DNA from: Setoptus koraiensis
Taxonomy: Eukaryota > Animalia > Arthropoda
DNA: 64,000 bases
Assembly (NCBI GenBank): GCA_048013815.1
Contig: CM106586.1
Coordinates: 6,510,001-6,574,000 of the forward strand
Direction of reading: 5' to 3'
This document shows, piece by piece, positions 12,801 to 57,818 of this stretch. Position 1 is the stretch's first letter. Each line of letters begins with the position of its first letter. Position numbers and translations under genes: made by a program. The notes beneath the pieces were generated by a model. The model saw nothing but the letters and a program-made list of their open reading frames with translations, was not told the origin of the DNA and ran no database searches.

Positions 12801-14779
12801 ATCAACACGATATCTCAAGTGGATCCGGAGGACCTGATTATATGATGGCTGTAGAAAGATTCTCTAAACAATCTTCCGAGAGTCGTCCATCGTCGATTAT
12901 AAATCCTATCAACGGTCAACAAGTTTTTTTCCAGCCAGTCGATGCAGATGGTAATAAAATCAATTTGCAAAATCTCAGACACGAGATTGTTGATCAAAAG
13001 TTGACAACTGTCAATGGATTAAACAACAATCATTCGCCTTACTTTTTGATGACGAGCAGTAACAACAACAGCATGGGCAGAAATGGGATCAATTATCAGC
13101 AAATAACGAGCGAAGATGGTAAAATGATTACTCGAGTTGAATTACCGAAGCCATTTGAACTTGATTATTTGTCCATGTCCAATCTAAACAATAGTGTCTC
13201 GCCCACTAGTGAACCTGACCAGATGGTGATGGCTGCACAACAACATAAGCTTTATTCCACTAATAATTTCAATCCTAGCCAAATATATTCTAATAACACC
13301 GTTAATAATGATGATCTAGTCACTAATAATTCAACGCCGTTAAATCATCAGTACGGAAATGCAACAAAATCAGCACATATAGTGAATAATAATATAAAAA
13401 TCACTCCTTCAATTGATTCGAATCAATTCGATATCACTAGACAGGCTTTCATGTGGAATAATTCAAAAGACTCCAACGCAATGCAACCTATCACTGAGTC
13501 CATAATGTTATCGTCTTTGGTGCTGCCGACACCAATCAATTTTACACGAGATTTGACCACTGCGACCACACCATCATTGGAGAACATTCGTTTGAGTTCT
13601 TACAATTATAATTCCAATACGAATAGCGGACCTCTTGTTCCTCTAGAAAGACCTACCATGTCTCCCACTGCCTATTCGTATCCTCGATACCAGATAAATT
13701 CAGTTATTCAACACACCGGAAAACCTCAACCTCCAATCAAGGTGGCTTCAACTATAGCAAGTCAAATATCAGGCTCGCGTTCGCTCGAAAACTTTCTTTT
13801 ATCTACACCAGGCTCTTCACGCAGCGGAAATTTCATAGTATTGGACTCTAATCCAAACGAAAAGATGACATCTCAAGCTCAACTGAGACCGAGATATATT
13901 GGGCGCATTCTAACACCATCTCATTTGATGACATCGTCTGACCTGCAAAAAGCTGCTAGTATGATCGATGATAAATATAAAATTGTTGGACATCAATTCG
14001 ATAGACTCTCATCGCTATCCTCGCCACCATCAACATCCATCGCATTAGATCCGATGATTGCGGCTCATTCTATCCCCTCTGTTATTTCAGGTCAATTGAT
14101 AGGTTTCGCCTCACCTGATGGTCAATCTCTGCATACAAAGCAAGCTAAAATAATGAATAGCAACGCAAGTCACGATAGCAAAGAAAACAAATCGAAATCT
14201 ATGCTAAACTTCTTACAGGATATTGCTCTTGGAGACATTCAATCATACTCTAAGAAAGATACTTATATGATTAACAACAATAATAATAAAAACAAATATA
14301 ACCACAAACTAATTGACGATCAGATATTCACTAAATTTATACCGAAGCTCATGTCATCTACAACTAGACCGACCATAACTACATATTATATCAAAGATAA
14401 ACCGCAAATTGATTCAAGCAATCAAGGGCAAACCAATGTAACAAATCAAACATCAGATACTGAACAGAATCAACTATCGAAAGAACTGACCGGGAACAAA
14501 CTGCCTATTGGTATTGTCGATGGCCATCATGCAACGAAAGAGCCCCAAATACTATTGCCTCATACAGAAAATATGGCCAACTATTCTGCAACACTACCCA
14601 CGAGTGATAACGACACTGATCATACAATATTATCTCACGTACTTTCACTGATCTCCACTAATGCTGTAGCTCCACCGGTAGTCTCGGTGGCCAGTTCTCC
14701 TGATGCTAGATTTTGGTCGGACAGTCTGAATCAACGGTACGACTTTATAGATTATGAGATAAATACTCGTCGGAGGTGA
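810..14779 (+). CDS. Skeletor: Skeletor-like protein: signal peptide, 2x DM13, DOMON, Skeletor C-terminal domain, then a very long low-complexity tail (about 2241 aa, 8 exons)
   Basis: Exons 810-909, 6794-7016, 7239-7701, 7922-7996, 8118-8217, 8320-8462, 8554-9747 and 10352-14779. All introns are GT-AG with matching phases; total 6726 nt, divisible by 3. Motifs: YYGTLIG..HEVSGDVYAVDEQTLFIKNFNYDGLAPDAYFW (DM13), a second DM13, LNCEILYDDLGYEIRW and YMAFGL (DOMON), WGITWYING..PELFVQRGKTYKFIVEGG, WTPDNNTPDVVYYQCYTHRDLGWRI. The links to exon 1 and to the terminal exon are less certain than the core. Confidence 0.85.
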
Positions 14780-16546: not shown

Positions 16547-17779
16547 ATGATGTGTATATTATTAATATCATACATTACATTGTACGTTAGTTCAATTTCA
16601 GCTTATTGCAACTATCAGGACTATTACAATGGCCAATCGGATAATCAAGATACCATGAATACTCTTTACGATAATGTGATGAATCTATCACATACATCTT
16701 TCTCATCATGCAATTATTGCAATGACCCTTATGCCATCGAACCCCCACCGGACGATATACTATTTATGCCACCGCCACCATTACCTCCAACGATACAAGC
16801 GTCATTATTTCCCAATCGTGACATGTCAATCGAATCAGAGGCTGTTAAACAATCTATGGATTTAGAATGTCATTTTTGCCATATATTCAACGAGGACGCC
16901 AGTGAGGCCAGACAAACTCAAGCTATTTACTCAAGGGCAGGCTTTCTAATGATCTTCACCATTTTGATCTCTCTGTCCATTGTTTATTTTGTGCGCACTA
17001 GACGTGGCAAAATTGTTGCCTCAAACATTCGTGCTACAATATTCAAATCGAATACAGCCACTTCATCATCAAGTAATAAATCATCATCATCTAGCCAAGA
17101 GTCATCACGTTTGTCCCATCACCCGACAGACCCTTGTTTGATGAGTATGAATAGAGAGAAAAATCTAACTTCACCAATAATAACAGATGTACCACACAAA
17201 AAGACGTCAATTCCTAGCAAATACTGGGCACAACCTAATTCTATTATAGGCAACACCATTAGTAGAATACCAAACGATTACGAGGTACCTTCATCAAGAA
17301 CTAATTCTACATGTACTTCAAGTGCAGTTTATGCAGATCTCACCAATGAGGGCCATCACTTGACGGCACAAGCCAGATTATTTTCACCCTACAACATGCA
17401 CACCTATGCCGAAGTTATGGATCCCACAAGCGACCAGCTAACAATGCCAGGTAACACCGGAATGGCACTACCTGATTCTAATTACGACAATGCTGTATAT
17501 TCTCATGGTAGTTTAGTTGGACCCAACATATTCAACGGATCCCTTCAACTATCTGATTTCCATCCAATGAGAACTCCGCATACTGTAATGTTGAACAATT
17601 CAACCATTCAAGCAAATCAAATGCATATTCAACATGTCAACAACATTAAGCCCTTTGCAACAATGCAACAACAACATCAACCACAGCCACATCGGGCTCA
17701 GATAATTGTGACAAGCAGCAATCAAGGATGTGGGCCATCCTTGTTGCACTTTAAAGACCGCCATCATGACGTCATTTGA
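16547..17779 (+). CDS. Uncharacterised single-pass type I membrane protein, 410 aa, intronless
   Basis: Long ORF with N-terminal hydrophobic signal, short ectodomain with two CxxC pairs around a Pro-rich stretch, TM helix (AGFLMIFTILISLSIVYFV) followed by RTRR, and a cytoplasmic tail with several Tyr motifs. Confidence 0.7.
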   Translation: MMCILLISYITLYVSSISAYCNYQDYYNGQSDNQDTMNTLYDNVMNLSHTSFSSCNYCNDPYAIEPPPDDILFMPPPPLPPTIQASLFPNRDMSIESEAVKQSMDLECHFCHIFNEDASEARQTQAIYSRAGFLMIFTILISLSIVYFVRTRRGKIVASNIRATIFKSNTATSSSSNKSSSSSQESSRLSHHPTDPCLMSMNREKNLTSPIITDVPHKKTSIPSKYWAQPNSIIGNTISRIPNDYEVPSSRTNSTCTSSAVYADLTNEGHHLTAQARLFSPYNMHTYAEVMDPTSDQLTMPGNTGMALPDSNYDNAVYSHGSLVGPNIFNGSLQLSDFHPMRTPHTVMLNNSTIQANQMHIQHVNNIKPFATMQQQHQPQPHRAQIIVTSSNQGCGPSLLHFKDRHHDVI

Positions 17780-23620: not shown

Positions 23621-26381
23621 CTATAGTCTCGTTTCAAATTGTTCGTCCAAGGCACTAGATTCTGCCTGGCCTGTTCCGGGATCTGACGACGATTCCAATG
23701 AAGAGGAGGATGACGACGACGACGACGATGACACCGACGCCGACGAAGGTGAGGGCGCCGATGCGGCCGATGTGAGCGCCGGCTGACTGAATCCTCGGTG
23801 CTCGTTGATTGTCGAGGGTATTCTGTCGAACGATGTCGATTGATTTACTGCCTGAGTGGCCTGAGCGACGGAAGATGGCGCAAATCTGCTGTAGTGACCC
23901 ATTGGCAGTGAAGAGGAAACGGGAGATGATTGAATGAGCGAGTTGAGTTTGTTGCTGTTTTGTTGGGCATTGTCAGATTGAGATACTGGCGAGGCTCGCT
24001 GATAGGCCGACGATGGATATATCGACGACAATAGTTGTGACTGTTGTTGCTGTTGTTGTTGTTGATTGGATGCTCCCAGAGACCAGGAGGACGAGGCAGG
24101 CGACGACGACGACGAGGACACAGAAGATTGTGGCGAAGATGAGGACAGTGATGACGACCAGTTGTTGCTTGGCTGACTGTTCATTGAGGCAGATGATGGC
24201 AAATTAGATTGGCCGGATTGAGAGGCCGGCGGGTAGGACACAAAAGGTGGCGACGATTGCTGCTGAGGCGCCACCGATTGTGGTACCAAATATGGCGCTG
24301 CTGCCGCTGATGTTGCACTGGCAGCCTGATCTAAAGACTTGGCCCCATTGTTTCCGGCGTGGCCGTTGCTGTTGAGCTGGCCGGACTGTTGCTGTTGCAT
24401 GCTGTTTGTCCATTGTTGGTTGTTGCCCTGATAGGATGATTGCGATGGGCTCGTCTTCTGAGAGCTTAAGCCCGAGTAAGACTGCTGCTGCTGCTGTTGG
24501 TTGCCTTGCTGGGGTCCGTTGTTTGTGGCTCTGGCTGGCCACGGATTAGAGGCGGCAAGCAGTGGTTGTTGCGCGGGTTGGCCTTGTTGACTGGGCGGCG
24601 CGACCGGTGGCGGCGATTGTTGCGGATAATTGTTTGAATTGGTGCTGGCACTGGCCACCAGGTCGGCGCCTGTTTGCATGGGACCCAATTGTTGCTGTTG
24701 CTGCGAACCGCTTGGCATATTGTTGCTCGCCGGTTGCATATGGTAGCGCTGTTGTTGTTGATATTGCTGTTGTTGCATGTTTGCTTGGGTGAGCCAGTTG
24801 GGCGCATTTGGTAGTGTTGTCCACTGTCCGTTCAGTTGTGATTGAGCCATCAGCTGGCTGGGGTGGTCGCGCCTGTTGTCAGAGTTAAACGGGACAGTGA
24901 TACACAAGGGAATGAGGACAGGTGAATAATGGATATCGCAATGTTTCGCTGCTTCAATTAACGGACAACTAACGGACAACCAACGGACTACTAACGGTAA
25001 TTGTCCACTACTCGACAACTACTAACTAGGCTACTCACCTGTTGAATATGTTGGCCAGCATGCCTGTGATGCCGCGCAGCCAGCCTGTGAGCGACGATCG
25101 TCGACCGGAGAGATTCGTTATGGGAACAGGCTGAATTTGTGCCGGATTCAGGCTCGATTGGGGGCCCACACCCGATGACGGCGAACCGGGCAACACGGAG
25201 AACATGTTGTGCTGCTGCTGTTGTTGTTGCTGGTGCTGTCCAGTTTGTTGCGGTTGTTGCTGCATGCTAGCCGCTTGGGCCTGATTGATTTGAACCGGCG
25301 ACGATTGGCCCGATGGCGCGTCGAGCGCCCCGTTGACCGATTGCTGTGGCTGATTATTCCATTGTTGCATTATCTGGCTGTTGGACGACGTCGACGACGG
25401 CCCATAGCCGGACGAGCCTGAGCCAGCGGACGATGCTTGCGGAGGCGCCTGATTGAAGCCGTTGGTCAGCGGCGCTAGGGAGGCCGAAACAGGGTTTGCC
25501 ATGCCATTGGGGCCCGATTGATCGAAGGGGCCGCTCATGGGATTGTTGAACCAGGCATTGTATTGCGGTTGTTGTGATTGTTGTTGCTGCTGTTGCTGAT
25601 TAGACAAACTAGCCACACCTAACGACGATGGCGACGATGCAATTAGAGGAAGTTGGGCGCTTCCCATGTAAGCGGCCGATTCAACATATTGATTGCGCGG
25701 TTCGGGCTTCAATGAATCGCTACTGAGTGTCGCGACATTTGATGATGCAACCGACAGTGAGGCAACAATGGGTTTTTGGTAGATAATTTGTGAGCTTGCT
25801 TGTTTGGCGCTGCTGTGGGCGCCCTCTTGGCTGAGATGCGATGCATGTATATCTGGCGAGTTGCTTTGTTGTTGTTGTTGTTGTTGTTGATGGTGGTGGT
25901 GGTGTTGTTGTTGCTGTTGGCTCGCTGTTTGATCGTTGACAGCAGCAGGGGGCACCACTTGCGCTGACGTCTGATAATGGTACTGATTGTAGGCATGATT
26001 GTTATGGTTCACGGGACTCAATGATTGTTGCTGTTGCTGCTGTTCGTCGGCATTGGAACGAACATTGGCCAGCTCGGATATTGCTGCCTGGTTACCTGTG
26101 TGCTCCATGGTTGCATGAGACTGCGCTGCCACGTCGGACATTTGCGCCGCCGGCACAAATGAACCGGATGAGGCCTGATGAGCGTCGCCATCGTGCACGA
26201 TCTTTGCATTGGAAGCTGTTGCTGCTGCCGGTGAACTGATTGGCGACGATTGATCCGTTAACGGGCTCCTCGAGGAGGCCAGCACACCCGTGAGCAACAG
26301 AGATTGCACTAGACAACAGGTGACAATGGTGGCAAACACAATTTTGTGCTTCTTCGGATATTTGGTCTGGCGATTCTTCAT
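23621..26381 (-). CDS. Predicted secreted Gln/Ser/Pro/Ala-rich low-complexity protein, about 864 aa, 2 exons
   Basis: Exons 26381-25039 and 24872-23621 join in phase 2 (AG|GTGAGT ... CAACAG|G); 2595 nt. The start MKNRQTKYPKKHKIVFATIVTCCLVQSLLLTGVLA is signal-like. An upstream in-frame ATG (MFTSTD) is an alternative start. Confidence 0.7.
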
Positions 26382-29300
26382 TCTTGTTGGCGCTGTTCGT
26401 GACGATTGGGCGGCGTCCGTCGATGTGAACATTTTACTGGGTGCTGATTTTGGTGCTGATTCTGGTGCTGCTTCGCTGATGCTGTAGGCTGGGTATCGTC
26501 GTTGCGGATTGGCTAATTGAGTCGATGCGGATTGGGTGTTTGGGTTGATGCCGATTGGGTGCTTGGGTTGCTGCGGAGAAACGGACGACAGTGGAAACAA
26601 TGGTGAGAACAATTGCCAGCGATCACTCGGAAATGCAACGATGAACAGATGATAATTTATTCTATGGGTGGCTTGGGTGAGACGATTGTGAGACTGTGAC
26701 CGAGAATCGACTTTGTCTGACCGAGAAATGACTTTGACTCGGCACTCTGGCAAACGTAAACACAAACAATGAACAGAACGCTTGCTATGTCGCTACTGAT
26801 TACCAATTAGCGACACTCACAACTGGCTAACTGGCGAAATTAACTCAACTGAGCGACCACCGCTCGACATTTGCAGTAATGGCCACAACAAGCCATACAT
26901 ACACGCCAGCCAGAGGAGATAAACAACAGAAATAACGGTTCTAAATGAATATGGTGGGCGCACCAAGGTCGTTGAACTACGCTGTGTCAGTCAGTGTGTG
27001 ATAAGTGGGACGTCTTCAAAGTTCGAGCGCCAATGCAGCAGCGCCAATAATCAGCGTGACAGATAATTGAGATAATTGAGAGATGCGACAGTCGAGAGTC
27101 AGGTGATTAAGCATCCGATGGTTATCTATGTGTTGCCATGTTGCTGTATCATGTTATCCATCAGCGAATATTGAACGCCCATCTCCGGGTCGAACAGATT
27201 CAGATTCAGCCACCATTGGCTGTGTGAATTATGGACTACGACATGTATGAGCCGCCGCCGATACAAGCACGACACACAACAACATGGACTCACGATGCAG
27301 CTGTTGCAGGTTGTCATTTGTAGTTGTCGCATGCCCTCTCAGATATATTTCAGATTTATTTATATATTGCACAACCGGTCTACTGTCAAATTGTCTCTAT
27401 TGGCCTGGTGAGACATGAGATGTTTTATTATGATTACCATTATAATCAATTATGGGAATCAAGAATGTGCCCAGTGTCTCGCCAGAGATAGAACCACTTT
27501 GGCCAGTTGGTGCAGTCGCAATGGCAACACTCCAACTGCCACTTCTTCTTCTTCTCTTGTTTATCTGCTCGTCATCGTTCGCCTTTGGGATCTATCGTCG
27601 CTTTCGGGATTCGTCGTTTGCTTTCGGGATTCATCGTTTGCAGCAACAACAACAGCAAGGAGACACGGCGAATATGACGAATGTGCGCTGAGCTATCAAT
27701 TATTATCGCCATTATGAGATTTTATAACCATGTGAAACTTCTCCCACCCGCTAACAAATATATGGTGCATCGAACACACAAATACACATATAAATATAAA
27801 TATATGTGGCGTATGCGGCTCAGACCTGAGCATTACGCAACTAATAGTTGACTTAACCAACCAAACACATAAATAGCCATCGCTGCAACCACTGTCAACT
27901 GAGCGCCTAATGCGCCTAAAGTGCCAAAAGTGTCCCAAGTATCACAGATATGATTCAGTTAGCGTTCAAATTATCAGCCCAACTGTTGGCTATCAGCTGA
28001 CGAGTGATGCAAGTCAGCCGAGTAAGAAGCGAGCTTTATCTTTTCTCAGACACCTGTATACAGGTATATACAGGTGACTTGCAACTGTGTGGCAAGCCAG
28101 TCAAGTTCAATGGCTTCTGTCGATGCTGCTGCCGCTGCTGCTGATCATAGGTTGATCATCATAGGTAATTGGTTCATAAGTAGCCAGTGTGATCTGTTTC
28201 TCGCAATGTCTCGGCAGTATCTCGGCAGTATCTCGGCAGTGTCGAGCATAATGGCAGTTTATCGGCGCATTGTCTGCAGACTTATTAAACTTTTGCTAAT
28301 TGCACAACTACTTTCTGTTGCTGGTTGCTCGCCGTGAAGCGGTCATAACTTTCCATTGATTGGATCACTGCTACTCACCTAGACAGACGATGACAGCGAC
28401 TGGTTGCTCTAGTTAGCAGTGTCTTCCTTTTATGTCTTGCTGTCTGTTGGTTTGGTATTATTGTTAGTTTGTCCACTTGCAATAATTACAGTCTTATAAC
28501 AAAGGCAACTATGCTAATATGATTGATGTCTCTATTCAGACAAATGATGCTGCTGCTTGAACACTTGTTGCTGCGATCGCTATGGGACCGTTGCAACTGT
28601 TGTTGCGATTATTAATTGTTTTTGTTGTTATACTTGTTGCTTGTCTATACTTGTCTATACTTACGACAATTGCGAGCATACGCCGTTAGGTTGCGACGAC
28701 AATTTGATAATTTACTTTTACTTTGGGCGACTGTGGTCTTGTTACGGCCAAAGATGTTTCAACAATGTTGCAAATGAAGTGTCTAAATTGTGTGAGCTCA
28801 CTGTCAACAATGCAGTTGCTAACTAACGACCAAAATAACGCTGCAAAACAAAAAAGAAACTTCAGCTTCTGCTGGCGATGATTGTTGGCAATTGTTGAGT
28901 TTGTCCGGCTTGTCTGCTGTCGTGTGTGCGAATGTATATGTGTGATTCGACTGACTGGCTTGACAATCTCGAGTCGAGATGACGATCGACAATATTCAGC
29001 CCGGCTAAATCGAGCTGCTCGATTTCTTCGGAGCATACATGACGAAAGAAAAATAGTATCAACGGGGAGGGACACTCCCATTGATCGCTACCAATCGATC
29101 GCTACCAATTGATCGCCATCAAATTGGGCACTATCAAAACTTGCCCGAGCTATTATAATTTCCTATTTCGGCACATCAGCTCCTTCGCTTCGGATCGCTT
29201 CGGATCGCTCGTCCGCTGCTCGGCTCCGTCGACGAATCATGTTGACAAAAAGTAAACTCCGACAAGTGGGAGGCATCCGCCTCGTTCTTTTCTGCATACT

Positions 29301-33872: not shown

Positions 33873-34372
33873 NNNNNNNNNNNNNNNNNNNNNNNNNNNN
33901 NNNNNNNNNNNNNNNNNNNNNNNNNNNNNNNNNNNNNNNNNNNNNNNNNNNNNNNNNNNNNNNNNNNNNNNNNNNNNNNNNNNNNNNNNNNNNNNNNNNN
34001 NNNNNNNNNNNNNNNNNNNNNNNNNNNNNNNNNNNNNNNNNNNNNNNNNNNNNNNNNNNNNNNNNNNNNNNNNNNNNNNNNNNNNNNNNNNNNNNNNNNN
34101 NNNNNNNNNNNNNNNNNNNNNNNNNNNNNNNNNNNNNNNNNNNNNNNNNNNNNNNNNNNNNNNNNNNNNNNNNNNNNNNNNNNNNNNNNNNNNNNNNNNN
34201 NNNNNNNNNNNNNNNNNNNNNNNNNNNNNNNNNNNNNNNNNNNNNNNNNNNNNNNNNNNNNNNNNNNNNNNNNNNNNNNNNNNNNNNNNNNNNNNNNNNN
34301 NNNNNNNNNNNNNNNNNNNNNNNNNNNNNNNNNNNNNNNNNNNNNNNNNNNNNNNNNNNNNNNNNNNNNNNN
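33873..34372. other. Assembly gap (500 N)
   Basis: A run of exactly 500 N; the round number suggests a scaffolding placeholder. Confidence 0.99.
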
Positions 34373-34447: not shown

Positions 34448-34508
34448 TGATTTGTTAGTAATAAAAATTTATTATTTCATCGAAATACTATTGAATATAT
34501 TGAAATAA
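34448..34508. repeat. 61-bp direct repeat, copy 1 (copy 2 at 38348-38408, downstream of the BiP stop)
   Basis: tgatttgttagtaataa(a/t)aatttattatt(t/g)catcga(a/t)atactattgaatatattgaaataa; 3 mismatches, copies 3900 bp apart. Confidence 0.9.
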
Positions 34509-34521
34509 TTCTTGAAATATT

Positions 34522-34891
34522 AGGCCGGGCGAGCGAAGCGAGCCGGTCTTTACAGATGCATTTTCGTTCTTTCCCCCTTTTACAGCAAAAAAGTCCATAG
34601 AGTTTTCCCCTTCATCGTGTTGTCGGAAATCTGTGTGCTTCAGTGGAGAAAAAGTGTGCTTTCCCCTCCGTGCAGCAAAAAAGCCCATTCAATTTTCCCC
34701 TTCTAAAAATCAGCTGTCCTGTTCTCGTTCGTTCCCTTCGAGGCGTGGAGTGCCGCGGTGGGAGACGAGGGGGGGCGGGGACTGGGAGAGTGGGAGACCA
34801 GGGAGTGTGTGATTTGCAGTATTGACAAGAAAATCTGAAGCGAGCTCGCCCGGCCTCTCTCTGTTAGTCAGAACAGAAGGTTATTCTTTTT
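34522..34891. mobile_element. Small non-autonomous element with Helentron/HINE-like (DINE-1-like) end structure
   Basis: Perfect 13-bp inverted repeats aggccgggcgagc (34522-34534) and gctcgcccggcct (34844-34856). The 5' repeat also pairs locally with ccggtct (34543-34549). A 3' stem-loop tctgtt-agtcag-aacaga (34860-34877) is followed by a T run. No TSD seen. Class assignment is inferred from architecture. Confidence 0.55.
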
Positions 34892-34930
34892 AAAAAGTAG
34901 AATTTCTCCGACGAATATCTACCAGGGCAT

Positions 34931-37510
34931 CTATTGAAGAGGGTCTTCGACCAATATCAGTCGTCGCGGCAAATACTGCCACAAGATGATAGTGTCCACT
35001 TCGGTCAGCTTGTGGCTGTTCTCAATGATGATGGTGTCGAACTTGCACCAGCTGTCCTCGTGAAACAATCTAGCCGCGTTGAATATGGTGCAGCACACTA
35101 CCTGACATCCGGCCAGCACTCGCCGTCTGGAGTCGCGCTGGTAGTCCAGCCAATCGTCTCTTTCGACCCAGTGGAGATTCATAAACTCGGCCGGGTCCAG
35201 TTCGCTTTTGTTGGGCAGCCCGGGCTTGTCGCACGGTGGCTGATGGCGCATCAGCACGTGCAAATAATACGACTTGCTGTTGTCCCGCTGAGGCCTATAA
35301 CGGGGCCTTACATGAACCACCTTGAGCTTGCCCGATTCATCCAGCCTGTCGGCTGTTTTTTCCAGCTCTTGGTCCGTGGCAGCCACAATCAGTATTTTGG
35401 ATTCGGGATGCGAGCGTGTCTCGTACAAAAATCGCGAGAATGTCACCAGCGACATAGAGCGCAAATCGGGGTCACCTTCCAACGCTAGCAGCGATATCCG
35501 TTGGCGCAGCAGCGACCCTATGGCCTCTCGTTTGCCCTGTCTCATGCCGTCGGGCCACTCGGGCTCTTTGGCGTACTTGAGCACATGAATGGTGTTGTTT
35601 GGTGCAACCAGTCTGTCGCGCAAATAAAAGTCCGATAATATGCGCGTTTTGGTGTACGAATGCGACATCTGGCATTCGCGCAGGCTCTCGCTAAGCAGCC
35701 AGTCATCAAACGACAAATCCCACGTGTGGTTGATCCGCGTGTCGGGCGGCAGCATGATGTACAGGCTTGAGTCGCGGTACGTCTCGGTATCGGGCAGATC
35801 CTCGCGCCGCATTACAATGCCCCGATCATCCTCCAGCACCCCATAGGGCTCAAATTGCACCACCATGCCGGGCCGAGCGTTTGCCAATAATTGTCGATTG
35901 CATTGGCGCGCCACCGCGTAGCCGCCCTCGGGTTTTGGGTCCACCTCGACGTTTCGATGTCGGCATCCGGGTTCCACCGTTCTGGCGCGCCAGCTCTGGA
36001 ACAACATTGTAATTTGTTGCATGTGTGCCTCTTCCTTTGGCGTCCAGTCCTTAGGTGGGTCGCGCGGGGGCCTCAGGTGGCATTGCCTGTTCCCCTCGAG
36101 CAGTGCCTCGTCGGGTGTCAGCCCGTTGATCGAGCGCAAACGAGGGCACGTGCGCGTCAGCTCAGACCAGAAATAATTTATGCTAGCCGGCGGACGTTGA
36201 TTTTCGTAAAATCTAAGCGAAAATATCTCCAAATTGCGCGATTTCTTGGCCAGTTTCAGCAGGCCTTTGTACACATCCCATTTGAACAGATTGTCGGCGT
36301 CTATGATGAGCGTCTTGAAGCTGTAGCGCCCCTCCGGATGCAATTCCGGATTGCATCCTTGCATCTCCGGATGCTCGAACAGAAGATGCTCGTGGAAGAA
36401 TTCAAAGATGATGGGGTCGCGCATGGTGAGGTGCAACAGGCGGTCGCGCGTTGCGTCAAACAATTGGTCCAGTTCGTCGGGATCGTCCAGCATGATGTAG
36501 TCCAAGGTGAGCGTGTGTAGCTCGCTTAAATTGACCACTAGAGCCAGCAGCTCGCCGTGCGCGAACGAGGTGCTGGTCACGTTCAAACTCGTCACGTGCT
36601 CACAATGATCCGTTACGATGCGATGATGATCGTGATGCACGCGCGGTATGACGCGGGCAAAATCGATATCGGTCACGTTGGGCGACTTCATGAACAGGGG
36701 CTCCAGCGAGGCCAGTTCGCGCGTTCGGGGCCTCCAACAGGCCAGCGACAGCTTCTTCAGGCCGACGTAGTGTTGTCTCACCAGCTCACATAGGTTCCTG
36801 GAGACGCAAGACAGTCGGGCCAGAGCTATGTGTTCGCCTTCTAACTGCCTCATGACGTGCAGCCAGACGTCATCCGGCAATTGGGGGATCATGGCAAATT
36901 CAATATGAGACAAAATGTTGAGACACGATTTGAGTATGGTGGACGATCTAACAAAATCCGATCTGTCAAAATAGAGTTTGCCCAGTTTGGTGTTGGTCTT
37001 GAACCAGAGCCGATCATTTTTGGCGTCTTTCAATGCGTCCAACGTTGTCTCATAAAACTCTTGCAACAATTCCATTTGTTTCGATGTTGATATGTAATCA
37101 AGAATGGAGTTGATTGATTTCTCGGAATAATTTCGAGTGACCGCACTCTTGATATAGGTTAACAATTGCTGGTATCTCAGCATCATCTCACTGTAGTTGC
37201 CCAAGCCAAAATTAATTTTTATCATTTGCTTAAGTGCCTTAAATCCCCAATCGCCTTTTTCGCCATTCTCCAATTCTAATACACGCTGAAAGCTTATCAG
37301 TGCCGCTTGTGGATTGTTTTCCTTCATGGCTTTTGAATTGTAATATTGATTTTCGAGGTCGACATCGGGCTCGGAATTACTATCTTCACTGTATTCGAGG
37401 TCGTAGTCCTCCTCGTCGTCGCACATGAAGTCGTTGTCGTTGTCAGACATATTTATTGTTTTATTATTCCGTATAACGTCGTCCGGCAATTGGCTGAAGG
37501 GGAAGCTCAT
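34931..37510 (-). CDS. Chimeric intronless protein: CSN2 N-terminal fragment, F-box, LRR, degenerate UPF1-like helicase N-half (859 aa)
   Basis: Single open frame. [40 protein letters not shown]...[12 protein letters not shown] is CSN2; [29 protein letters not shown] is an F-box; LRR-like repeats follow; the C-terminal part is collinear with UPF1 1B/RecA1/1C ([49 protein letters not shown]). Confidence 0.85.
36885..37475 (-). other. CSN2: 591-bp insert derived from COP9 signalosome subunit 2 (25 nt of leader, roughly the first 170 codons, short unrelated tail), flanked by an 18-bp duplication
   Basis: Flanks on the plus strand are acgtcatccggcaattgg (36867-36884) and acgtcgtccggcaattgg (37476-37493). 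The paralog has a single copy at 54880-54897. 591+18=609 nt, i.e. 203 codons, so the frame is preserved. Confidence 0.9.
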
Positions 37511-38495
37511 GGCACCAGATTCCGCCCACTCCTCGGGAAATGGATAATTACCGGCAACTGGTAATTACGGGCCACGGGCTACGGGGATTACCTGTAGACA
37601 TCGGCGGCTGCTTGGTTGTGGTGGCTAATAAGTGGCCGTTTGTTTATAGCGGCCAATTAGTTGCTAATTAGTGGCTAGTCCTATAGAAATGGAAATTGCG
37701 TTTTAAATATTTGCGACTTGTGTCTGTGTGTGTGTGGGTGGATTGTGTGTGATTTATGGCGATTGGGTCTGGATATTGGTTGCGATCTTATCTCGATAGA
37801 GCGTTGTTGTGAAATGATACAAAATGAAACGAAACGAAATGAGAAGACAAACAAACGACTCCAACAATGAATTGGTGCAACAAATGAAACAATGCCCCAT
37901 TGCTCTGGCCTGATGCGAGCAAACGTTTAGCTTGCGCTCGCGCTTTCCCATCGAGCATGCCAACCATTAATACTGGTGCGAGGTCGATGCACCTGTCGCA
38001 CCGACCGTTGGATGGTGCACAGTCACCTTTAAACAATCAGCACGACGACAGTCGACGGTCGAAGGGTATCGCCAATTGCGACCTGCAACCGTCGATAAGT
38101 ACCAACTGCATGTCTAATCCCTATATTACTCATGTGTTAGCTGCGCTCGCCAATCTCGAGCTTTGCGGCTCAGAATCGAGTGCATCCGATGGGCCGACAC
38201 CAACAACTAGTTGATTCTACTACACTCTTCTTTGAAAACACTTGAAATCGCTTTAAAACAAGCATATCTACATATGTATGAATTGGTCAGTCTAATCTAT
38301 CGTCTTGTTATCCTCTGATGGTAAACATTCTCAAAGAGACGTTGAAATGATTTGTTAGTAATAATAATTTATTATTGCATCGATATACTATTGAATATAT
38401 TGAAATAAATATTCTTTTTACAAAGTGGAAAAACCTAATCCTTTTTCTTATAAGGTTGTGATAAATTCTTTAGAAACAAGCGGTAATGTATATTT

Positions 38496-40622
38496 TTACA
38501 GCTCGTCATGGTCGTCTGCAGTCGTTCTTTCTTCATCATCGCTAGGGCTGGATTTAGGACCAGATTTATCAGATTGGTAGAGTTTAGTGATGATTGGTGT
38601 GACAGTAGCCTCAAGTTCCTTCTTTTTGGCCCTTAATTCTTCAGCATCAGCCGATGGATTGGACTCTAACCATTTGACAGCGTCCTCTGCCGACTCTTCA
38701 ATCTTTGTCTTGTCATCATCTGATAGTTTTCCGCCCAATTTTTCTTTATCTTGTAATTGATTTTTTAACGAGTATGCGTATGATTCTAGTTCGTTCTTTG
38801 CCTCGACACGCTCCTTCAGTTTTTTATCATCATCAGCGAACTTTTCGGCCTCTTTGATCATACGATCGATGTCTTCTGGTTTCAGTCTGTTTTGATCATT
38901 AGTAATAGTGATACTCTGCTTGCTACCAGCACCTTTATCTTCAGCGGAAACTTTCAAAACACCGTTGACATCTATTTCGAAAGTAACTTCGATTTGTGGC
39001 ACACCTCGGGGAGCTGGTGGAATTCCAGTCAAGTCGAACTTGCCTAACAAGTGGTTGTCTTTTGTCATTGGACGCTCACCCTCATAAACTTGAATGGTGA
39101 CGGTATTTTGATTATCACTCGCTGTACTGAAAATTTCGGATTTCTTCGTTGGAATAACTGTGTTCCTCTTGATCAGTGTAGTCATCACACCGCCTATTGT
39201 TTCAATTCCCATTGTCAGTGGATTAACATCCAACAAAACGAGATCATTTGTGCTATCCTCGCCACTTAAAACGCCAGCTTGTACAGCGGCACCATAGGCG
39301 ATGGCCTCATCAGGGTTGATACCAAGCGAAGGCTCTTTACCGTCAAAGAAGTCGCGCACTAATTGTTGAATTTTAGGTATACGAGTGGAGCCACCGACAA
39401 GCACGATTTCATGGATTTGACTTTTAGTGAGACCGGCATCTTCCAAAACTTTTTTAACTGGCTTCAAAGTTGATCTGAACAATTCCATGTTAAGTTCTTC
39501 AAACTTGGCACGCGACAATGTCTCTGAGAACTCTTCGCCCTCGAAGAATGAATCAATCTCAATTGTAGTTTGCGGAGCGGAACTCAAAACTCTCTTAGCC
39601 TTTTCAACTTCACGACGTAATTTTTGTACAGCGCGGTGGTCCTTACGAACGTCTTTACCTGTCTTCTTCAGGTACATTTTGATAAAATGGTCCATAACTT
39701 TTTGATCGAAATCCTCGCCACCTAAATGAGTGTCACCGCTTGTGGCGGCAACCTCGAAAACACCTTGCTCAATAGTTAACAGAGACACATCAAATGTACC
39801 ACCACCTAAATCGTAGACAATAATATTTTTTTCTCCTTTGGATCGTTTGTCAACACCAAAAGCAATAGCGGCGGCCGTTGGTTCATTGATGATTCTCATA
39901 ACGTTCAGTCCAGCAATGGCACCGGCATCCTTAGTTGCTTGACGTTGAGCGTCATTGAAATAGGCTGGCACTGTGACAACAGCATGAGTAACTTTCTTAT
40001 TGAGATATTGTTCTGCCACCTCTTTCATTTTAGACAAAACCATGGAACTGATCTCTTCGGGAGCGAACACCTTTTCCTCGCCACTAACTTTCACCTTAAT
40101 GTAGGGTTTGTTCTGTTTGTTGACGACTGTTGAATGGTTCAAATCAAACATGAGCAGTGTTAGTTTGGAATCGTTTAGACATATTGTTGGGTAAGTTTGT
40201 GAATAGTGGTACAGAGTGACTACTATTGTTCATATATTTCATTACTACTTACTCTTGTATGGTAGGTACTTGATGTCATGCTGCACTGTGGGGTCGTCGT
40301 ATTCTCGGCCAATCAGACGTTTTACATCGAATACAGTGTGTTCCGGATTTGAGGTAAGCTGATTTTTGGCGGCATCACCAATGAGACGCTCACCTTCGGC
40401 TGTAAATGCAACAACGGACGGTGTAATACGGTTACCTTGTTCGTTGGGTATAATTTCCACCTGCCCATTTTTGTAGACACCAACGCACGAGTATGTTGTA
40501 CCTAAATCAATACCAATAACAGTGCCGACGTCCTCCTTTTCCTTCTCTTTTGCCCAAATGCAATAAGAGCACAGTAGAAGCACTAGGGCAAATTGTGATA
40601 TGTGTCCTTTCACCATCATCAT
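38496..40622 (-). CDS. Hsc70-3: ER chaperone BiP / GRP78 (Hsp70 family), about 666 aa, 2 exons
   Basis: Exons 40622-40253 and 40126-38496 (phase 1; 2001 nt). Signal peptide, [52 protein letters not shown]-terminal HDEL. Confidence 0.97.
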
Positions 40623-52956: not shown

Positions 52957-55129
52957 TCCGACGAATATCTAGCGAATATCTAGGGCGCTCCGACTAATAT
53001 CAGTCGTCGCGGCAAATACTGCCACAAGATGATAGTGTCCAATTCGGTCACCTGGTGGCTGTTCTCAATGATGATGGTGTCGAACTTGCACCAGTTGTCC
53101 TCGAGAAACAATCTAGCCGCGTTGAATATGGTGCAGCACACTACCTGACATCCGGCCAGCACTTGGCGTTTTGAGTCGCGCTCGTATTTCAGCCAATCCT
53201 CCTTTCCTTCCGTGTCGAGATTCATAAACTCGGCCGGGTCCAGTTCGCTTTTGTTGGGCAGCCCGGGCTTGTCGCACGGTGGCTGATGGCGCATCAGCAC
53301 GTGCAAATAATACGACTTGCTGTTGTCCCGCTGAGGCCTATAACGGGGCCTTACATGAACCACCTTGAGCGTGCCTGATTCATCCAGCCTGTCGGCTGTT
53401 TTTTCCAGCTCTTGGTCCGTGGCAGCCACAATCAGTATCTTGGATTCGGGATGCGAGCGCGTCTCGTACAAATATTTCGAGAATGTCGCCAGCGTCATGG
53501 AGCGCACATCGGGGTTACTCTCCAACGCTAGCAGCGATATCCGTTCGCGCAGTACCGACCCTATGGTCTCCCGTAGGACTTGTGTCATGCCGTCGGGCCA
53601 CTCGGGCTCTTTGGCGTACTTGAGCACATGAATGGTGTTGTTTGGTGCAATCAGTTTGTCGCGCAAATAAAAGTCCGATATTATGCGCTGTTCTACGTAC
53701 GAATGCAACATCCGGCATTCGCGCAAAAACAGCAGCCTCACATCATGAAACGACAAATCAAAATTGCCCGTGCGTTCGATGCGCGTGTTGGCCGGAAGCA
53801 TGATGTACAGGCTCGTGTCGCGGTACGTCTCGGTATCGGGCAAATCCTCGCGCCGCATTACAATGCCCCGATTCTCGTACATCACCCGAGAGCGCACAAA
53901 TTCCACTACCATGCCGGGCCGAGCGTTTGCCAATAATTGTCGGTTGCATTGGCGCGCCACCGCGTAGCCGCGCTCGGGTTTTGGGTCCACCTCGACGTTT
54001 CGATGTCGGCATCCGGGTTCCACTGTTCTGGCGTGCCATCTCGTGAATACCGCTGTAATTTGTTGCATGTGTGCCTCTTCTCGTCGGGTCCAGTCATCAG
54101 GTGGGTCGCGCGGGGGCCTAAAATGGCATCGCCTGTTCCTTGGGAGCTGTGCCTCGGATGGTGTCAGCCCGTTGATCGAGCGCAAACGGGGGCACGTGCG
54201 CCTCAGCTCTAACCAGAATAAATCTATGCTCTCCGGCAGGGATTGATTTTCGTAAAATCTAAGCGCAAATGTCTCCAAATTGAGCGATTGCGTGGCCAGT
54301 CTCAGCAGGCCGTCGTACACTTCCAAATTGAACAGATCGTCGGCGTCTATGATGAGCGTCTGGAAGCTGTAGCGCCCCTCCGGATGCAAGAACAGGTGAG
54401 CCTTGAAGCCGCACTCGATGATGATGGGGTCGCGCATGGTGAGGTGCAACAGGCGGTCGCGCGTTGCGTCAAACAATTGGTCCAGTTCGTCGGGATCGTC
54501 CAGCATGATATAGTCCAAGGTGAGCGTGTGAAGCTTGCTTAAATTGACCACAAGAGCCAGCAGCTCGCCGTGCGCGAACGAGGTGCTGGTCACGTTCAAA
54601 CTCGTCACGTGCTCGCAATGATCCGTTACGATGCGATGATGATCGTGATGCACGCGCGGTATGACGCGGGCAAAATCGATATCGGTCACGTTGGGCGACT
54701 TCATGAACAGGGGCTCCAGCGAGGCCAGTTCGCGCGTTCGGGGCCTCCAACAGGCCAGCGACAGCTTCTTCAGGCCGACGTAGTGTTGTCTCACCAGCCT
54801 ATATAGGCTCCTGGAGACTCGAGACAGTCGGGCCAGAGCTATGTGTTCGCGTTCTAGCTGGCTCATGATGCGCAGCCAGACGTCGTCCGGCAATTGGCTG
54901 AAGGGGCGGCTCATGGCACCAGATTGCGCCCACTCCTCGGGAAATAGATAATTACCGGCAACTGGTAATTACGGGCCACGGGCTACGGGGATTACCTGTA
55001 GACACCAGTAATTAGTGGCTGCTTGGTTGTGGTGGCTAATTAGTGGCCGTTTGTTTACAGTGGCCAATTAGTTGCTAATTAGTGGCTAGTCCTATAGAAA
55101 TGGAAATTGCGTTTTAAATATTTGCGACT

Positions 55130-55160
<31 letters not shown>

Positions 55161-56354: not shown

Positions 56355-57818
56355 CTACTGGCCTTATCGGCAATTTGGCTATAAGTCGGGCGCAGAGCAG
56401 CGCCCTTATTGCCCGGGCAATAGGCCTATTGCCCGCACACTAATCAAAAGTACACTCAAAAGTCATTTCGCCCGCCAATTTCGAACACAAAAACGCTGGA
56501 TCTCGTCGGGCCGACAAGCAGCACGAAGCGTGCATCACGACCTCGAACTTGCACCAAATACAATGCCATGGATGCCGCGACGAGACGGCGAGGGAGACGG
56601 ACCGACAGAGACCTAATGTAAACTGATAGAGACAGAGAGAGAGAGAGAGAGAGACTCCGGCCAGTCGCCGGTGCAAATGCACACATATCAACAGAATGCG
56701 CCGGCACTGATTCCCGCAGCCACACCAAAGCAGTTTGAGCCTGTTCTCGTTCTCATGTGTAGCTCTGATTATGCTCAGGTGAGCTTGCGCAACAGCAGAT
56801 ATTCGGCCGGCGAACATTAGTTACGGGCATGAATGGTGAGCCTTGAGATGACCCAGCAGTATGGTGTCGTGATAATGCATTGGCCAACGATGCCAGCCGC
56901 CAGCCAATGCGCCTCGTCTGGCTCGATGCTGCAATTTTGTGTTGCCGCCGCTGTTTCCTTGGTGCAGCAGCAACAACAACATCAACTTATTCACCTGTTG
57001 GCATACTTTGTTACGCAATGCTTGTTTTGCTGGCGCCGGCGCTGCTGCTGCTGCTGCTGCAAGCAGCGTGAAATTGCAGCGTTTGCCGTGGTGCGCTGTG
57101 TTTAAACTTGCGCAAACACCGCATGAAGTGATGTGATGTGAGCTCTTCGGCTTGCGTAACACAACAGGTTGTTGGCCACAAAGTCAGTGGTTGAGTTTGG
57201 CTCAACTCACGCTGATGACCAGCCCATTTCGCCTGTTTCGGCTGGTCGGCGGCGGACGGGCCACGGCAAACGGCAAGTCACACACACCGACACTCGCACT
57301 CTTACGCCAGCAAATAGGATCAATCTATCGCTTGTGCTCGTCGTCGTCGTCGTCGGCGTACATTGTTCCACCGCACTTGTCCGCATTTTTTATCCGCAGC
57401 GCTTGTCCGCATTATTTATCCGCAGCATTTATCCGCAGCAGTTGTGCCGAACTAAATGGGACAACGACAGGCCTGACAGACACACCAACAAGCAAGCAAA
57501 CGAACCAGCCAACGAACGAACGAGCCAACGAACGAATCCGCGAACGAGCCAACGAACATGCCGCTGGCGACACAGTCTTAGTCAATACCGATTAGTCAGG
57601 CAATCGTCAAGTGTTATAACTGGGGCCAACTGGGATAAAACGTTGCCCAAGCCAAGCATCGAAAGAATTCACGCAATAAACGCACCTCAACATATCACTC
57701 ATCGGGCACTTGCAATCTCCCACTTCGAACAGAAGCAGTCAATTAAGCGAATATCAAGCACAGTTCAACTATACTCAGCATACAGTGGCCTGCAGTGGTG
57801 AAACAAGTGTCAAATATC

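What the first reader, a model, noticed from the sequence alone, without database searches (positions are those of the whole stretch)
34931..37510. CSN2 fragment captured in frame inside an F-box gene: a CSN2-F-box-LRR-pseudo-UPF1 chimera
Seen in sequence: a 591-bp, visibly AT-richer segment (36885-37475) sits in a GC-rich F-box gene, flanked by an 18-bp duplication (1 mismatch). The paralog at 52980-54914 has the 18-mer once, so it represents the empty site. The insert carries 25 nt of apparent leader (read as IRNNKTIN), the CSN2 start codon, roughly 170 CSN2 codons with no stop or frameshift, and about 15 unrelated codons. Because the duplication covers QLPDDV, a complete F-box is regenerated downstream of the insert. 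Established: F-boxes bind SKP1 in SCF ligases; the CSN2 N-terminal helical repeats contact the cullin C-terminal domain/RBX1 during deneddylation, and the GFKALKQ segment (retained here) lies in the InsP6-binding region. Inference: the fusion joins an SCF substrate receptor to the cullin-gripping arm of its own regulator. It could bind CUL1 at both ends and shield its SCF from the COP9 signalosome, or lock it inactive. It could also be a recent neutral insertion.
Basis: partly seen in the sequence, partly recalled or inferred. Interest (0 to 1): 0.9.

Follow-up and report, generated by a model that had tools for sequence, protein, structure and literature searches.

The report
Newborn CSN2–F-box fusion gene
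A piece of the housekeeping gene CSN2 was very recently copied, in frame, into the start of one member of a fast-evolving F-box gene family; the DNA event is real, but nothing yet shows that the fusion protein is made or does anything.

Summary
One of two paralogous F-box/LRR/dead-half-UPF1 genes (34931-37510, minus strand) carries a 591-bp AT-rich insert. The other paralog (52980-54914) has the empty site. The insert encodes CSN2 residues 1-182, less four codons, and leaves an 859-codon ORF open.

Refinements:
- A contig in an independent run matches 524 bp of the insert exactly, then continues into a different upstream sequence. This is the parental CSN2, so the insertion is very young and no dN/dS can be computed.
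- The target duplication is not just 18 bp. About 49 bp, including the gene's start codon, is repeated in degenerate form after the insert.
- The junctions carry 6 nt of filler and a short patch. There is no poly(A), no mRNA 3' end and no terminal inverted repeats. This points to error-prone template-switching repair rather than classical retroposition.
- Logan contigs of another run span both junctions exactly, so an assembly artefact is unlikely.
- No transcript of the fusion was seen. The one probable RNA data set shows paralog B and CSN2, but not copy A.
- Relatives of the F-box family lack any such N-terminal extension.
- The fragment keeps the CUL1/IP6-facing module but not the RBX1-RING contacts.

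Verdict: a real, newborn chimeric ORF, most likely neutral. The scan had already noted this F-box family elsewhere in the genome, but not the CSN2 insertion.

The parts
34931..37510 (-). Chimeric ORF of 859 aa: own N-terminus (12 aa), read-through leader, CSN2 fragment, junction, F-box, LRR-like region, dead half-UPF1
   Evidence: ORF list; Pfam F-box at aa 208-249 and AAA_11 at aa 792-859
37476..37524 (-). Native target sequence, copy 1. Includes the gene's start codon (37510-37508) and the 18-bp repeat (37493-37476).
   Evidence: Collinear with paralog B; repeat D2; extended duplication
37470..37475 (-). 6 nt of filler at the 5' junction, neither target nor parental CSN2
   Evidence: The parental contig in run X7 matches only up to 37469, then diverges for 52 nt (tables 7 and 8)
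37451..37469 (-). 19 nt of the CSN2 5' leader, read through in frame
   Evidence: Identical to the X7 contig that continues into a different upstream sequence
36917..37450 (-). CSN2 codons 1-182 minus 4 (178 codons). Covers the acidic tail, the IP6-site lysines and the rigid N-terminal helical module.
   Evidence: E 5e-89 to PDB 4D10_B; 96% aa and 89% nt identity to the closest CSN2, P0001/L001; 36946-37469 is 100% identical to the X7 contig
36904..36916 (-). Short patch of uncertain origin at the 3' junction. It overlaps a 10-nt exact reverse-complement copy of 37045-37054.
   Evidence: Inverted repeat I4; shuffle test p about 0.03-0.04
36867..36903 (-). Degenerate second copy of the target, with three small deletions and one substitution. 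Includes a regenerated ATG (36892-36890, Met207) in the same context, and the second 18-bp repeat (36884-36867).
   Evidence: Local alignment with shuffle p = 0.0016; coordinates
36764..36889 (-). F-box (aa 208-249)
   Evidence: Pfam PF00646, E 1.2e-7, 31.8 bits against a cutoff of 20.5
36071..36763 (-). LRR-like region (approximate bounds)
   Evidence: The AF2 model of paralog B has alternating strand/helix units. Foldseek matches Skp2, FBXL2 and TIR1 with TM (target) 0.45-0.50. The sequence-level LRR signal is weak.
34934..36070 (-). UPF1-like region (approximate bounds). RecA1 lacks Walker A and DExx, and the protein ends at motif III.
   Evidence: Family HMM against UPF1 chains, E 3.8e-13, alignment shown; Foldseek against UPF1, Sen1 and IGHMBP2, E down to 5e-13; Pfam AAA_11, partial
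52980..54914 (-). Paralog B (644 aa). The uninterrupted (empty) site has the 18-mer once, at 54880-54897.
37511..38218 (-). Upstream region shared with paralog B (94% then 81% identity). Presumed promoter and 5' UTR.
   Evidence: blastn. A B-type contig in X7 extends to the position equivalent to 37736 without a splice.

Best explanation
This is a real and very recent DNA rearrangement in one copy (A) of a multi-copy, fast-evolving, lineage-restricted F-box/LRR/dead-half-UPF1 gene family. A break at the first codons of the gene was repaired by error-prone, template-switching synthesis. That synthesis copied about 553 nt from the CSN2 gene, or from its cDNA: 19 nt of leader plus codons 1-182. 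It also duplicated about 49 bp of the target, start codon included, and left filler and a small patch at the joints. The result happens to keep the reading frame. If copy A is transcribed from its normal promoter, the first AUG would give an 859-aa protein: own N-terminus, CSN2(1-182), F-box, LRR, half-UPF1. That protein would carry the autonomous N-terminal CSN2 module that faces the CUL1 four-helix bundle and binds IP6. It would lack the PCI domain, so it could not enter the signalosome, and it would lack the RBX1-RING contacts. The most likely present status is a neutral or mildly deleterious newborn variant in a redundant paralog, with no acquired function.

Shown: the anatomy, the presence of both junctions in reads, the identity to the parent, and the domain content.
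Inferred: the repair mechanism, translation of the fusion, and neutrality.
For: Insert and empty site:
-.

Reality of the junctions:
- Logan contigs of run X2 cover 36756-36958 and 37011-37570 with 0 mismatches at depth 15-25.
- X2 differs from the window at copy-A positions 36156 and 35516, so it is not simply the assembly's own consensus.
- Run X1 holds 0.95-0.98 of the sampled words.

Youth:
- The X7 contig at 36946-37469 has 0 differences, then 52 nt of different upstream sequence, which marks it as the parental CSN2.

Not a classical retrocopy or transposon:
- There is no poly(A), no mRNA 3' end and no terminal inverted repeats.
- The insert is cut at both ends relative to the parent.

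Error-prone repair:
- 6-nt filler.
- A degenerate 37-nt copy of a 49-nt target (p = 0.0016).
- A reverse-complement patch (p about 0.04).
- One mismatch in the 18-bp repeat against none in 524 bp of insert.

Redundancy and relaxed constraint:
- A against B gives dN/dS 0.77 at dS 0.125.
- Relatives are only 29-41% identical although CSN2 is 96% identical.
- Other notes of the scan report many copies in this genome (unchecked).

No expression evidence:
- X7 covers only genic parts and so looks like RNA. It shows B, CSN2 and BiP but no copy A.
- RNA-labelled runs hold none of the sampled words, or only words internal to the insert.
- The exact-protein look-up was empty.

Fragment properties:
- A CSN2 fragment of about residues 30-167 was crystallised as a T4-lysozyme fusion (6A73), and that entry is the IP6 co-crystal.
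- CSN2 30-180 docks as a rigid body near the CUL1 four-helix bundle (PMC4878873).
- Deleting CSN2 1-269 abolishes substrate binding.
- The RBX1-RING contacts lie at residues 260-320.
Against: - Keeping the ORF open needed the one open frame out of six plus a length divisible by three. My estimate of the prior chance is 2-6%.
- The captured piece ends almost exactly at the flexible loop (aa 180) that bounds a natural CSN2 module. Both features are what a selected fusion would also show.
- Absence of copy A from X7 may mean that the population lacks the copy, not that the copy is silent.
- The kind of run X7 (RNA or DNA) is not on record.
- The same-species parent was seen only for 524 of 553 nt.
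- Whether the template was DNA or cDNA cannot be told, because the relative's CSN2 has no introns.
Confidence: 0.62

Rival explanations
1. Functional chimera. The fusion is expressed, and its CSN2 module docks on the CUL1 C-terminal domain (in cis or on a neighbouring CRL) with IP6. It competes with the signalosome, so it either shields that SCF from deneddylation or locks it.
For: - The 859-codon ORF is intact and uses the native start.
- The upstream region is 94% identical to that of paralog B, which appears to be transcribed.
- The fragment equals the autonomous CUL1/IP6-facing module.
- The IP6-site K70 equivalent is retained (K70E is described in PMC8080631).
- An ORF-preserving capture is a priori unlikely.
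Against: - There is zero divergence from the parent, so no signature of selection is possible yet.
- No transcript was seen.
- No relative carries such an extension.
- The RBX1-RING contacts (aa 260-320) and the CSN4 half of the clamp are missing.
- The host family evolves under relaxed constraint.
- The AF2 model is uninformative at the junction, with pLDDT below 50 for residues 181-240.
Confidence: 0.12
2. The insert behaves as extra 5' sequence only. The regenerated start codon (Met207, 36892-36890, same context as the native ATG) is used, through an internal transcription start or leaky scanning. An almost normal F-box protein is then made without the CSN2 part.
For: The duplication includes the ATG and its upstream context. 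Met207 lies one residue before the F-box.
Against: Eight in-frame AUGs precede Met207 in the same ORF, so scanning ribosomes from the native 5' UTR should start earlier. No evidence was found for an internal promoter.
Confidence: 0.1
3. Classical LINE-mediated retroposition of CSN2 mRNA, giving a processed retrocopy with a target-site duplication.
For: - A flanking duplication of a length typical for target-primed reverse transcription.
- No introns in the insert.
- Eriophyoid-type genomes are thought to lose introns through reverse-transcribed cDNA (PMC7738191).
Against: - No poly(A) and no mRNA 3' end; the copy holds the 5' part only.
- It starts inside the leader rather than at its end: the parental contig runs on 52 nt further.
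- The duplication is degenerate, with small deletions.
- The relative's CSN2 is intronless anyway, so the lack of introns says nothing.
Confidence: 0.08
4. Assembly or library artefact: a chimeric join of CSN2 sequence into the F-box gene that does not exist in the animal.
For: A 500-N gap lies about 560 bp beyond the gene's stop. The insert is identical to another locus.
Against: - Independent k-mer contigs (Logan) of run X2 cross both junctions with no mismatch at depth 15-25, similar to neighbouring single-copy sequence.
- Runs from three or more other samples hold 78-98% of the sampled words.
- A duplicated, degenerate target with filler is a biological repair scar, not a mis-join.
Confidence: 0.03

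Closest known systems
TRIMCyp (a cyclophilin A copy captured in the TRIM5 ubiquitin-ligase gene of owl monkeys and macaques) and jingwei-type chimeric genes of Drosophila. Recalled from my own knowledge, not tested here.
   Same: A copy of a conserved housekeeping gene lands in a fast-evolving gene of the ubiquitin-ligase world and creates a new fusion ORF.
   Different: Those are poly(A)-bearing retrocopies joined by splicing, and they are expressed and selected. Here a 5' fragment sits directly inside the first coding exon, has no poly(A), shows a repair scar, has zero divergence from its parent and has no expression evidence.
Templated insertions at repaired breaks: polymerase-theta end joining, FoSTeS/MMBIR-type template switching, and capture of cDNA or organelle DNA at breaks. 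General knowledge; a literature search was run but none of those papers was read.
   Same: An ectopic template is copied exactly. There is filler at one joint and a small inverted patch at the other. The flanking sequence is duplicated with errors, and no transposon ends are present.
   Different: Typical polymerase-theta insertions are tens of bases long. This one is 553 nt from a distant gene and falls in frame in a coding exon.
CSN2 / COPS2 (Alien), the cullin-docking subunit of the COP9 signalosome
   Same: Residues 1-182 are about 85% identical to human CSN2, including the IP6-site lysines and the rigid 30-180 module that faces the CUL1 four-helix bundle.
   Different: There is no PCI/winged-helix domain, no C-terminal helix and no RBX1-RING contact region. 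It cannot be a signalosome subunit.
FBXL-type SCF substrate receptors (Skp2, FBXL2, TIR1)
   Same: An F-box followed by an LRR-like solenoid. N-terminal extensions before the F-box occur in known family members (my own knowledge).
   Different: The C-terminal part is a catalytically dead, half-length UPF1-like RecA1 module. Only a handful of relatives exist, all in one related sample.

Membership tests
CSN2/COPS2 signalosome subunit | N-terminal helical-repeat arm homologous to CSN2 | tested here: met
   phmmer against PDB: ORF aa 21-195 match 4D10_B aa 5-178 (CSN2 1-174), E 4.9e-89. 96% identity to the closest CSN2.
CSN2/COPS2 signalosome subunit | PCI / winged-helix domain (PF01399) and the C-terminal helix that build the complex | tested here: not met
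   Pfam finds no PCI domain in the 859-aa ORF, whereas full CSN2 proteins carry PF01399 and PF25983. CSN2 homology ends at about residue 182.
CSN2/COPS2 signalosome subunit | RBX1-RING contact residues (E260, G290, I291, D298, N320) | tested here: not met
   The residues named in PMC12848000 lie beyond the captured 1-182.
F-box protein (SCF substrate receptor, FBXL type) | F-box motif | tested here: met
   PF00646: E 1.2e-7, 31.8 bits (cutoff 20.5) at aa 208-249. Paralog B: E 9e-9.
F-box protein (SCF substrate receptor, FBXL type) | Leucine-rich-repeat solenoid after the F-box | tested here: inconclusive
   At fold level, Skp2, FBXL2 and TIR1 match with TM (target) 0.45-0.50 on a model of mean pLDDT 68. 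Sequence-level hits are only E 0.01-0.09.
F-box protein (SCF substrate receptor, FBXL type) | Binds SKP1 and assembles with CUL1-RBX1 | not testable with these tools
   Needs co-IP or complex modelling.
UPF1-like SF1B helicase | RecA1 domain homologous to UPF1 | tested here: met
   Family HMM against UPF1 chains, E 3.8e-13, from the Q motif to motif III. Foldseek E 5e-13.
UPF1-like SF1B helicase | Walker A (GPPGTGKT), motif II (DExx) and a second RecA domain | tested here: not met
   In the alignment the P-loop column block is non-conserved and DEST reads ENS. The protein stops at motif III.
Processed retrocopy (LINE-mediated) | Poly(A) tract and the mRNA 3' end next to the target duplication | tested here: not met
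   The sequence at 36885-36945 has no A-tract, and the copy ends at codon 182 of 444.
Processed retrocopy (LINE-mediated) | Loss of parental introns | tested here: inconclusive
   The closest CSN2 gene (L001) is a single 444-codon ORF on a multi-gene contig, so there is no intron to lose. The same-species parent locus could not be fetched.
Templated insertion by template-switching break repair | Exact copy of an ectopic template, cut at arbitrary points at both ends | tested here: met
   524 of 524 nt are identical to the parental contig. The copy starts 19 nt before the ATG, although the parent continues at least 52 nt further, and it ends inside the CDS.
Templated insertion by template-switching break repair | Filler, local patches and error-bearing duplication at the joints | tested here: met
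   6-nt filler. A degenerate 37-nt copy of a 49-nt target, p = 0.0016. A 10-nt inverted patch, p about 0.04.
Templated insertion by template-switching break repair | Microhomology at the switch points | tested here: inconclusive
   In the relative (L001), CSN2 continues with a 7-nt string identical to the target repeat in its copy-2 variant. The same-species sequence at that point is unknown.

The most novel reading that the evidence does not exclude
The fusion is expressed and acts as a natural built-in signalosome decoy. An SCF substrate receptor carries CSN2's own CUL1/IP6-docking module, which would alter neddylation cycling of its own ligase or of neighbouring ligases. That would be a newborn regulator caught at zero divergence from its parent.
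Probability: 0.07. Interest if true: 0.75.

Novelty: new member of a known kind. Interest (0 to 1): 0.35.

Why it matters
If nothing more, this is a clean, datable example of how a new multi-domain ORF is born. A break in a redundant paralog was repaired by copying part of an unrelated essential gene. The parent is still identical and the empty site is preserved next door. The host genome also seems to belong to a lineage (probably eriophyoid mites) known for extreme streamlining and cDNA-mediated intron loss.

If the fusion proved to be expressed, it would be a natural test of what the isolated CSN2 N-terminal module does when tethered to an SCF receptor. That experiment is of interest for cullin-RING ligase regulation.

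Tried and rejected
- **Word-indexed protein search with paralog B:** no hit. The exhaustive HMMER search found only 9 hits, six of them traced to Logan and three of those to a single sample.
- **Exact-protein look-ups of the chimera and of B:** nothing on record.
- **Raw RNA run X16:** 0 reads on the whole 4-kb stretch, including the CSN2-identical part and the BiP 3' end. The organism is not in that run, so this is no test. The runs labelled 'organism C' are probably host material.
- **Spliced-out insert:** I saw no canonical GT..AG at the insert borders when reading the sequence. The 'skips 609' joints in X2 and X7 are at least largely paralog B, because their variant letters equal B's. An empty copy-A allele in X2 cannot be excluded.
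- **DNA transposon or Helitron capture:** no terminal inverted repeats at the insert ends.
- **Parent in the window:** none.
- **dN/dS of the insert against its parent:** impossible, because there are 0 differences. Against the relative's CSN2 the differences are mostly synonymous (89% nt, 96% aa), but that divergence belongs to the parental lineages.
- **MAFFT alignments for a chimera model:** these kept placing the family's F-box onto a look-alike CSN2 stretch. The AF2 model of the chimera built on A3 (mean pLDDT 62) is below 50 for residues 1-47 and 181-240, so it says nothing about the junction or the F-box.
- **Cis-reach of the CSN2 module to the CUL1 C-terminal domain:** could not be modelled, as no multimer tool was available.
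Full report
**1. Observation**

The minus-strand ORF at 34931-37510 (859 aa) is present as described. A second copy of the gene, B, lies at 52980-54914 (644 aa).

blastn of the two loci aligns A 37979-37476 to B 55398-54880, and A 36884-36407 to B 54897-54420. The two B ranges overlap by 18 bp. So A contains 591 extra bases (36885-37475) bracketed by an 18-bp repeat with one mismatch (family D2), and B is the empty site.

The insert has 40% GC and the rest of the ORF has 56%. This matches the 39% of the CSN2 coding sequence of a relative.

ORF residues 21-195 match human CSN2 residues 1-174 at E 4.9e-89.

**2. Finer anatomy**

The closest CSN2 in the protein collection is P0001: 96% aa identity and 89% nt identity, from one Logan sample. 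There it is a single uninterrupted 444-codon ORF on a 6-kb contig on which seven genes were called.

It reaches codon 182, with a four-codon gap (QLHK).

Laying public runs on 34500-38500 gave the key result. In run X7 a 576-nt contig matches 36946-37469 with no difference, and then continues for 52 nt into sequence unlike the F-box gene. This is the parental CSN2 of the same or a nearly identical population. Three things follow:
- The insert is identical to its parent over all 524 comparable bases.
- Only 19 nt of the '25-nt leader' are parental. The first 6 nt (37475-37470) are filler.
- The copy does not begin at the 5' end of the parental contig.

At the other joint, most of the supposed unrelated codons are a degenerate second copy of the gene's own 5' end. 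Native 37524-37476 (context, ATG, first 11 codons) recurs at 36903-36867 with three small deletions and one substitution (shuffle p = 0.0016). The regenerated ATG (36892-36890) is Met207, one residue before the F-box.

The remaining 13-nt patch overlaps a 10-nt exact reverse-complement copy of 37045-37054 (p about 0.04).

In the relative, the CSN2 sequence just past the captured end shares 7 nt with the target repeat, in the variant carried by copy 2. This is a candidate microhomology and remains unproven.

**3. Is it real?**

Logan contigs of run X2 cover 36756-36958 and 37011-37570 with no mismatch, at depths of 15 and 25. These depths are like those of neighbouring copy-A contigs.

X2 also carries private differences in copy A: 36156 G>T and 35516 C>T, which are not paralog-B letters. 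So X2 is not merely the assembly's consensus.

X1 holds 95-98% of the sampled words, and X4/X5 hold 78%.

The 'skips 609' joints seen in X2 and X7 carry B's letters and so represent paralog B, at least in the main. A repair scar with filler and a degenerate duplication is not what a mis-assembly looks like. I put an artefact at about 3%.

**4. How it arose (inference)**

The following features all argue against classical retroposition and against transposon capture:
- There is no poly(A) and no mRNA 3' end.
- There are no terminal inverted repeats.
- The copy is cut at both ends relative to the parent.
- There is filler at one joint.
- There is an inverted micro-patch at the other.
- The target duplication is long and error-bearing.

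One mismatch in 18 bp of repeat, against none in 524 bp of insert, also suggests that the error was made during the event rather than afterwards. This is my own estimate: at best p about 0.01 under equal rates.

The pattern fits error-prone, template-switching break repair that copied from the CSN2 gene or from its cDNA. The two templates cannot be told apart, because the relative's CSN2 has no introns.

**5. The host gene**

Pfam finds an F-box and a partial AAA_11 domain in both copies.

An exhaustive HMMER search of 1.84 billion representatives found only nine hits. Four are full-length relatives at 31-41% identity, and none has an N-terminal extension. The six checked all come from Logan, and the three whose contigs were fetched (the CSN2 P0001, P0121 and P0122) come from one sample.

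A family profile matches UPF1 RecA1 from the Q motif to motif III (E 3.8e-13). The P-loop and DExx are replaced, and the proteins of A, B and P0121 end there.

An AF2 model of B (mean pLDDT 68) matches UPF1, Sen1 and IGHMBP2 (E down to 5e-13) in its C-terminal part. Its N-terminal part matches Skp2, FBXL2 and TIR1 (TM 0.45-0.50). So the 'F-box-LRR-pseudo-UPF1' label is supported.

A against B gives dN/dS 0.77 at dS 0.125, with mosaic identity along the gene. The family therefore evolves fast or under relaxed constraint. Other first-stage notes report many copies in this genome (not checked here).

**6. Expression**

No evidence was found. X7 covers only genic stretches: B-type contigs, CSN2, and the BiP 3' end starting 118 nt after its stop. 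It covers nothing in the intergenic 37850-38250. It therefore looks like RNA, although its kind is not on record. It contains B and CSN2 but no copy-A sequence.

X10, labelled 'RNA?', holds only a 223-nt piece internal to the insert. The other RNA-labelled contig runs (X25-X32) hold none of the sampled words. The raw RNA run X16 had no read at all, even on the CSN2-identical part, so the organism is absent from it.

The best named BiP match is the eriophyoid Aceria tosichella. With the intron-poor, compact contigs, this suggests an eriophyoid-type mite, with 'organism C' as its host plant. This is inference; the literature context is PMC7738191 and the 2026 bioRxiv preprint read.

Absence of A from X7 may therefore mean either silence or a population without copy A.

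**7. What the protein could do**

According to the literature:
- CSN2 residues 30-180 dock as a rigid body near the CUL1 four-helix bundle and helix 24, ending at a flexible loop at aa 180 (PMC4878873).
- Deleting CSN2 1-269 abolishes substrate binding.
- IP6 binds a lysine patch on CSN2. The PDB entry 6A73 aligns to CSN2 residues about 30-167 and is a T4-lysozyme fusion, and it is the IP6 co-crystal structure. K70E impairs IP6 binding (PMC8080631).
- The RBX1-RING interface uses E260, G290, I291, D298 and N320 (PMC12848000).

The captured 1-182 therefore equals a natural, autonomously folding CUL1/IP6-facing module. It lacks the RING contacts, the PCI domain and the CSN4 half of the clamp. 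It could at most act as a weak competitor or tether.

Whether it can reach the CUL1 C-terminal domain in cis from the F-box could not be modelled. The AF2 model of the whole fusion is below pLDDT 50 at residues 181-240.

**8. Verdict**

The sequence observation is confirmed and sharpened. The functional reading is not supported by any data so far, and zero divergence leaves nothing on which selection could be measured.

Keeping the frame had a prior chance of roughly 2-6%, and the fragment ends at a module boundary. Both keep the functional reading alive at about 10%.

I classify it as a new member of a known kind: a young chimeric ORF made by in-frame capture of a gene fragment. Interest is 0.35.

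Noticed in passing
window 33873-34372: A run of 500 N (an assembly gap) lies about 560 bp beyond the stop codon of the chimeric gene. In X2, contig depth rises to about 550 at 34500-34633, which suggests repeated sequence next to the gap.
   Followed up: partly
window 34948-36884 against 52991-54897: Identity between paralogs A and B is mosaic. It is 96% over 36407-36884 and 89% over 34948-36343, with 16 gap openings yet both ORFs open. At 36343-36407 a 63-nt segment in A is replaced by 30 nt in B. Blocks of perfect identity alternate with clusters of replacements, which suggests patchy gene conversion or compensated frameshifts. Overall dN/dS is 0.77.
   Followed up: partly
window 36518, 36523, 36602 (run X2) and 36602 (run X7): In run X2 only paralog-B letters were seen at three positions of the 96%-identical stretch. 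The B-type contig of X7 carries the copy-A letter at 36602. Strains seem to differ in which paralog's variant sits where.
   Followed up: no
window 38496-40151 (-): An ER chaperone BiP gene (ends in HDEL, Pfam HSP70 E 1e-212) lies directly upstream of copy A. The ORF starts at HSP70 profile position 89, so the first 90-100 residues must lie in an upstream exon. Its best named match is the eriophyoid mite Aceria tosichella at 83%.
   Followed up: partly
window ~37740-37760 and ~55130-55157: A (CA)n/(TG)n microsatellite sits in the shared upstream region of both paralogs. Contigs of X2 and X7 break there.
   Followed up: no
L002 154-2166; L003 8001-10166 (Logan sample SRR33593474): The related species has at least five diverged members of the F-box/LRR/half-UPF1 family (29-41% identity to B). 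Three of them extend 50-70 residues beyond motif III, where A, B and P0121 stop.
   Followed up: partly
window 10382-14779 (+), 57795-59744 (+), 25035-26765 (-), 23621-25018 (-), 16547-17779 (+): Five long ORFs (410-1465 aa) have no Pfam match at E 0.01.
   Followed up: no
alignments A1/A3, ORF aa 166-197 against aa 211-245: MAFFT repeatedly aligned the family's F-box helices onto the CSN2 stretch around [15 protein letters not shown]. This is a superficial look-alike that misled three alignments. No homology is implied.
   Followed up: no
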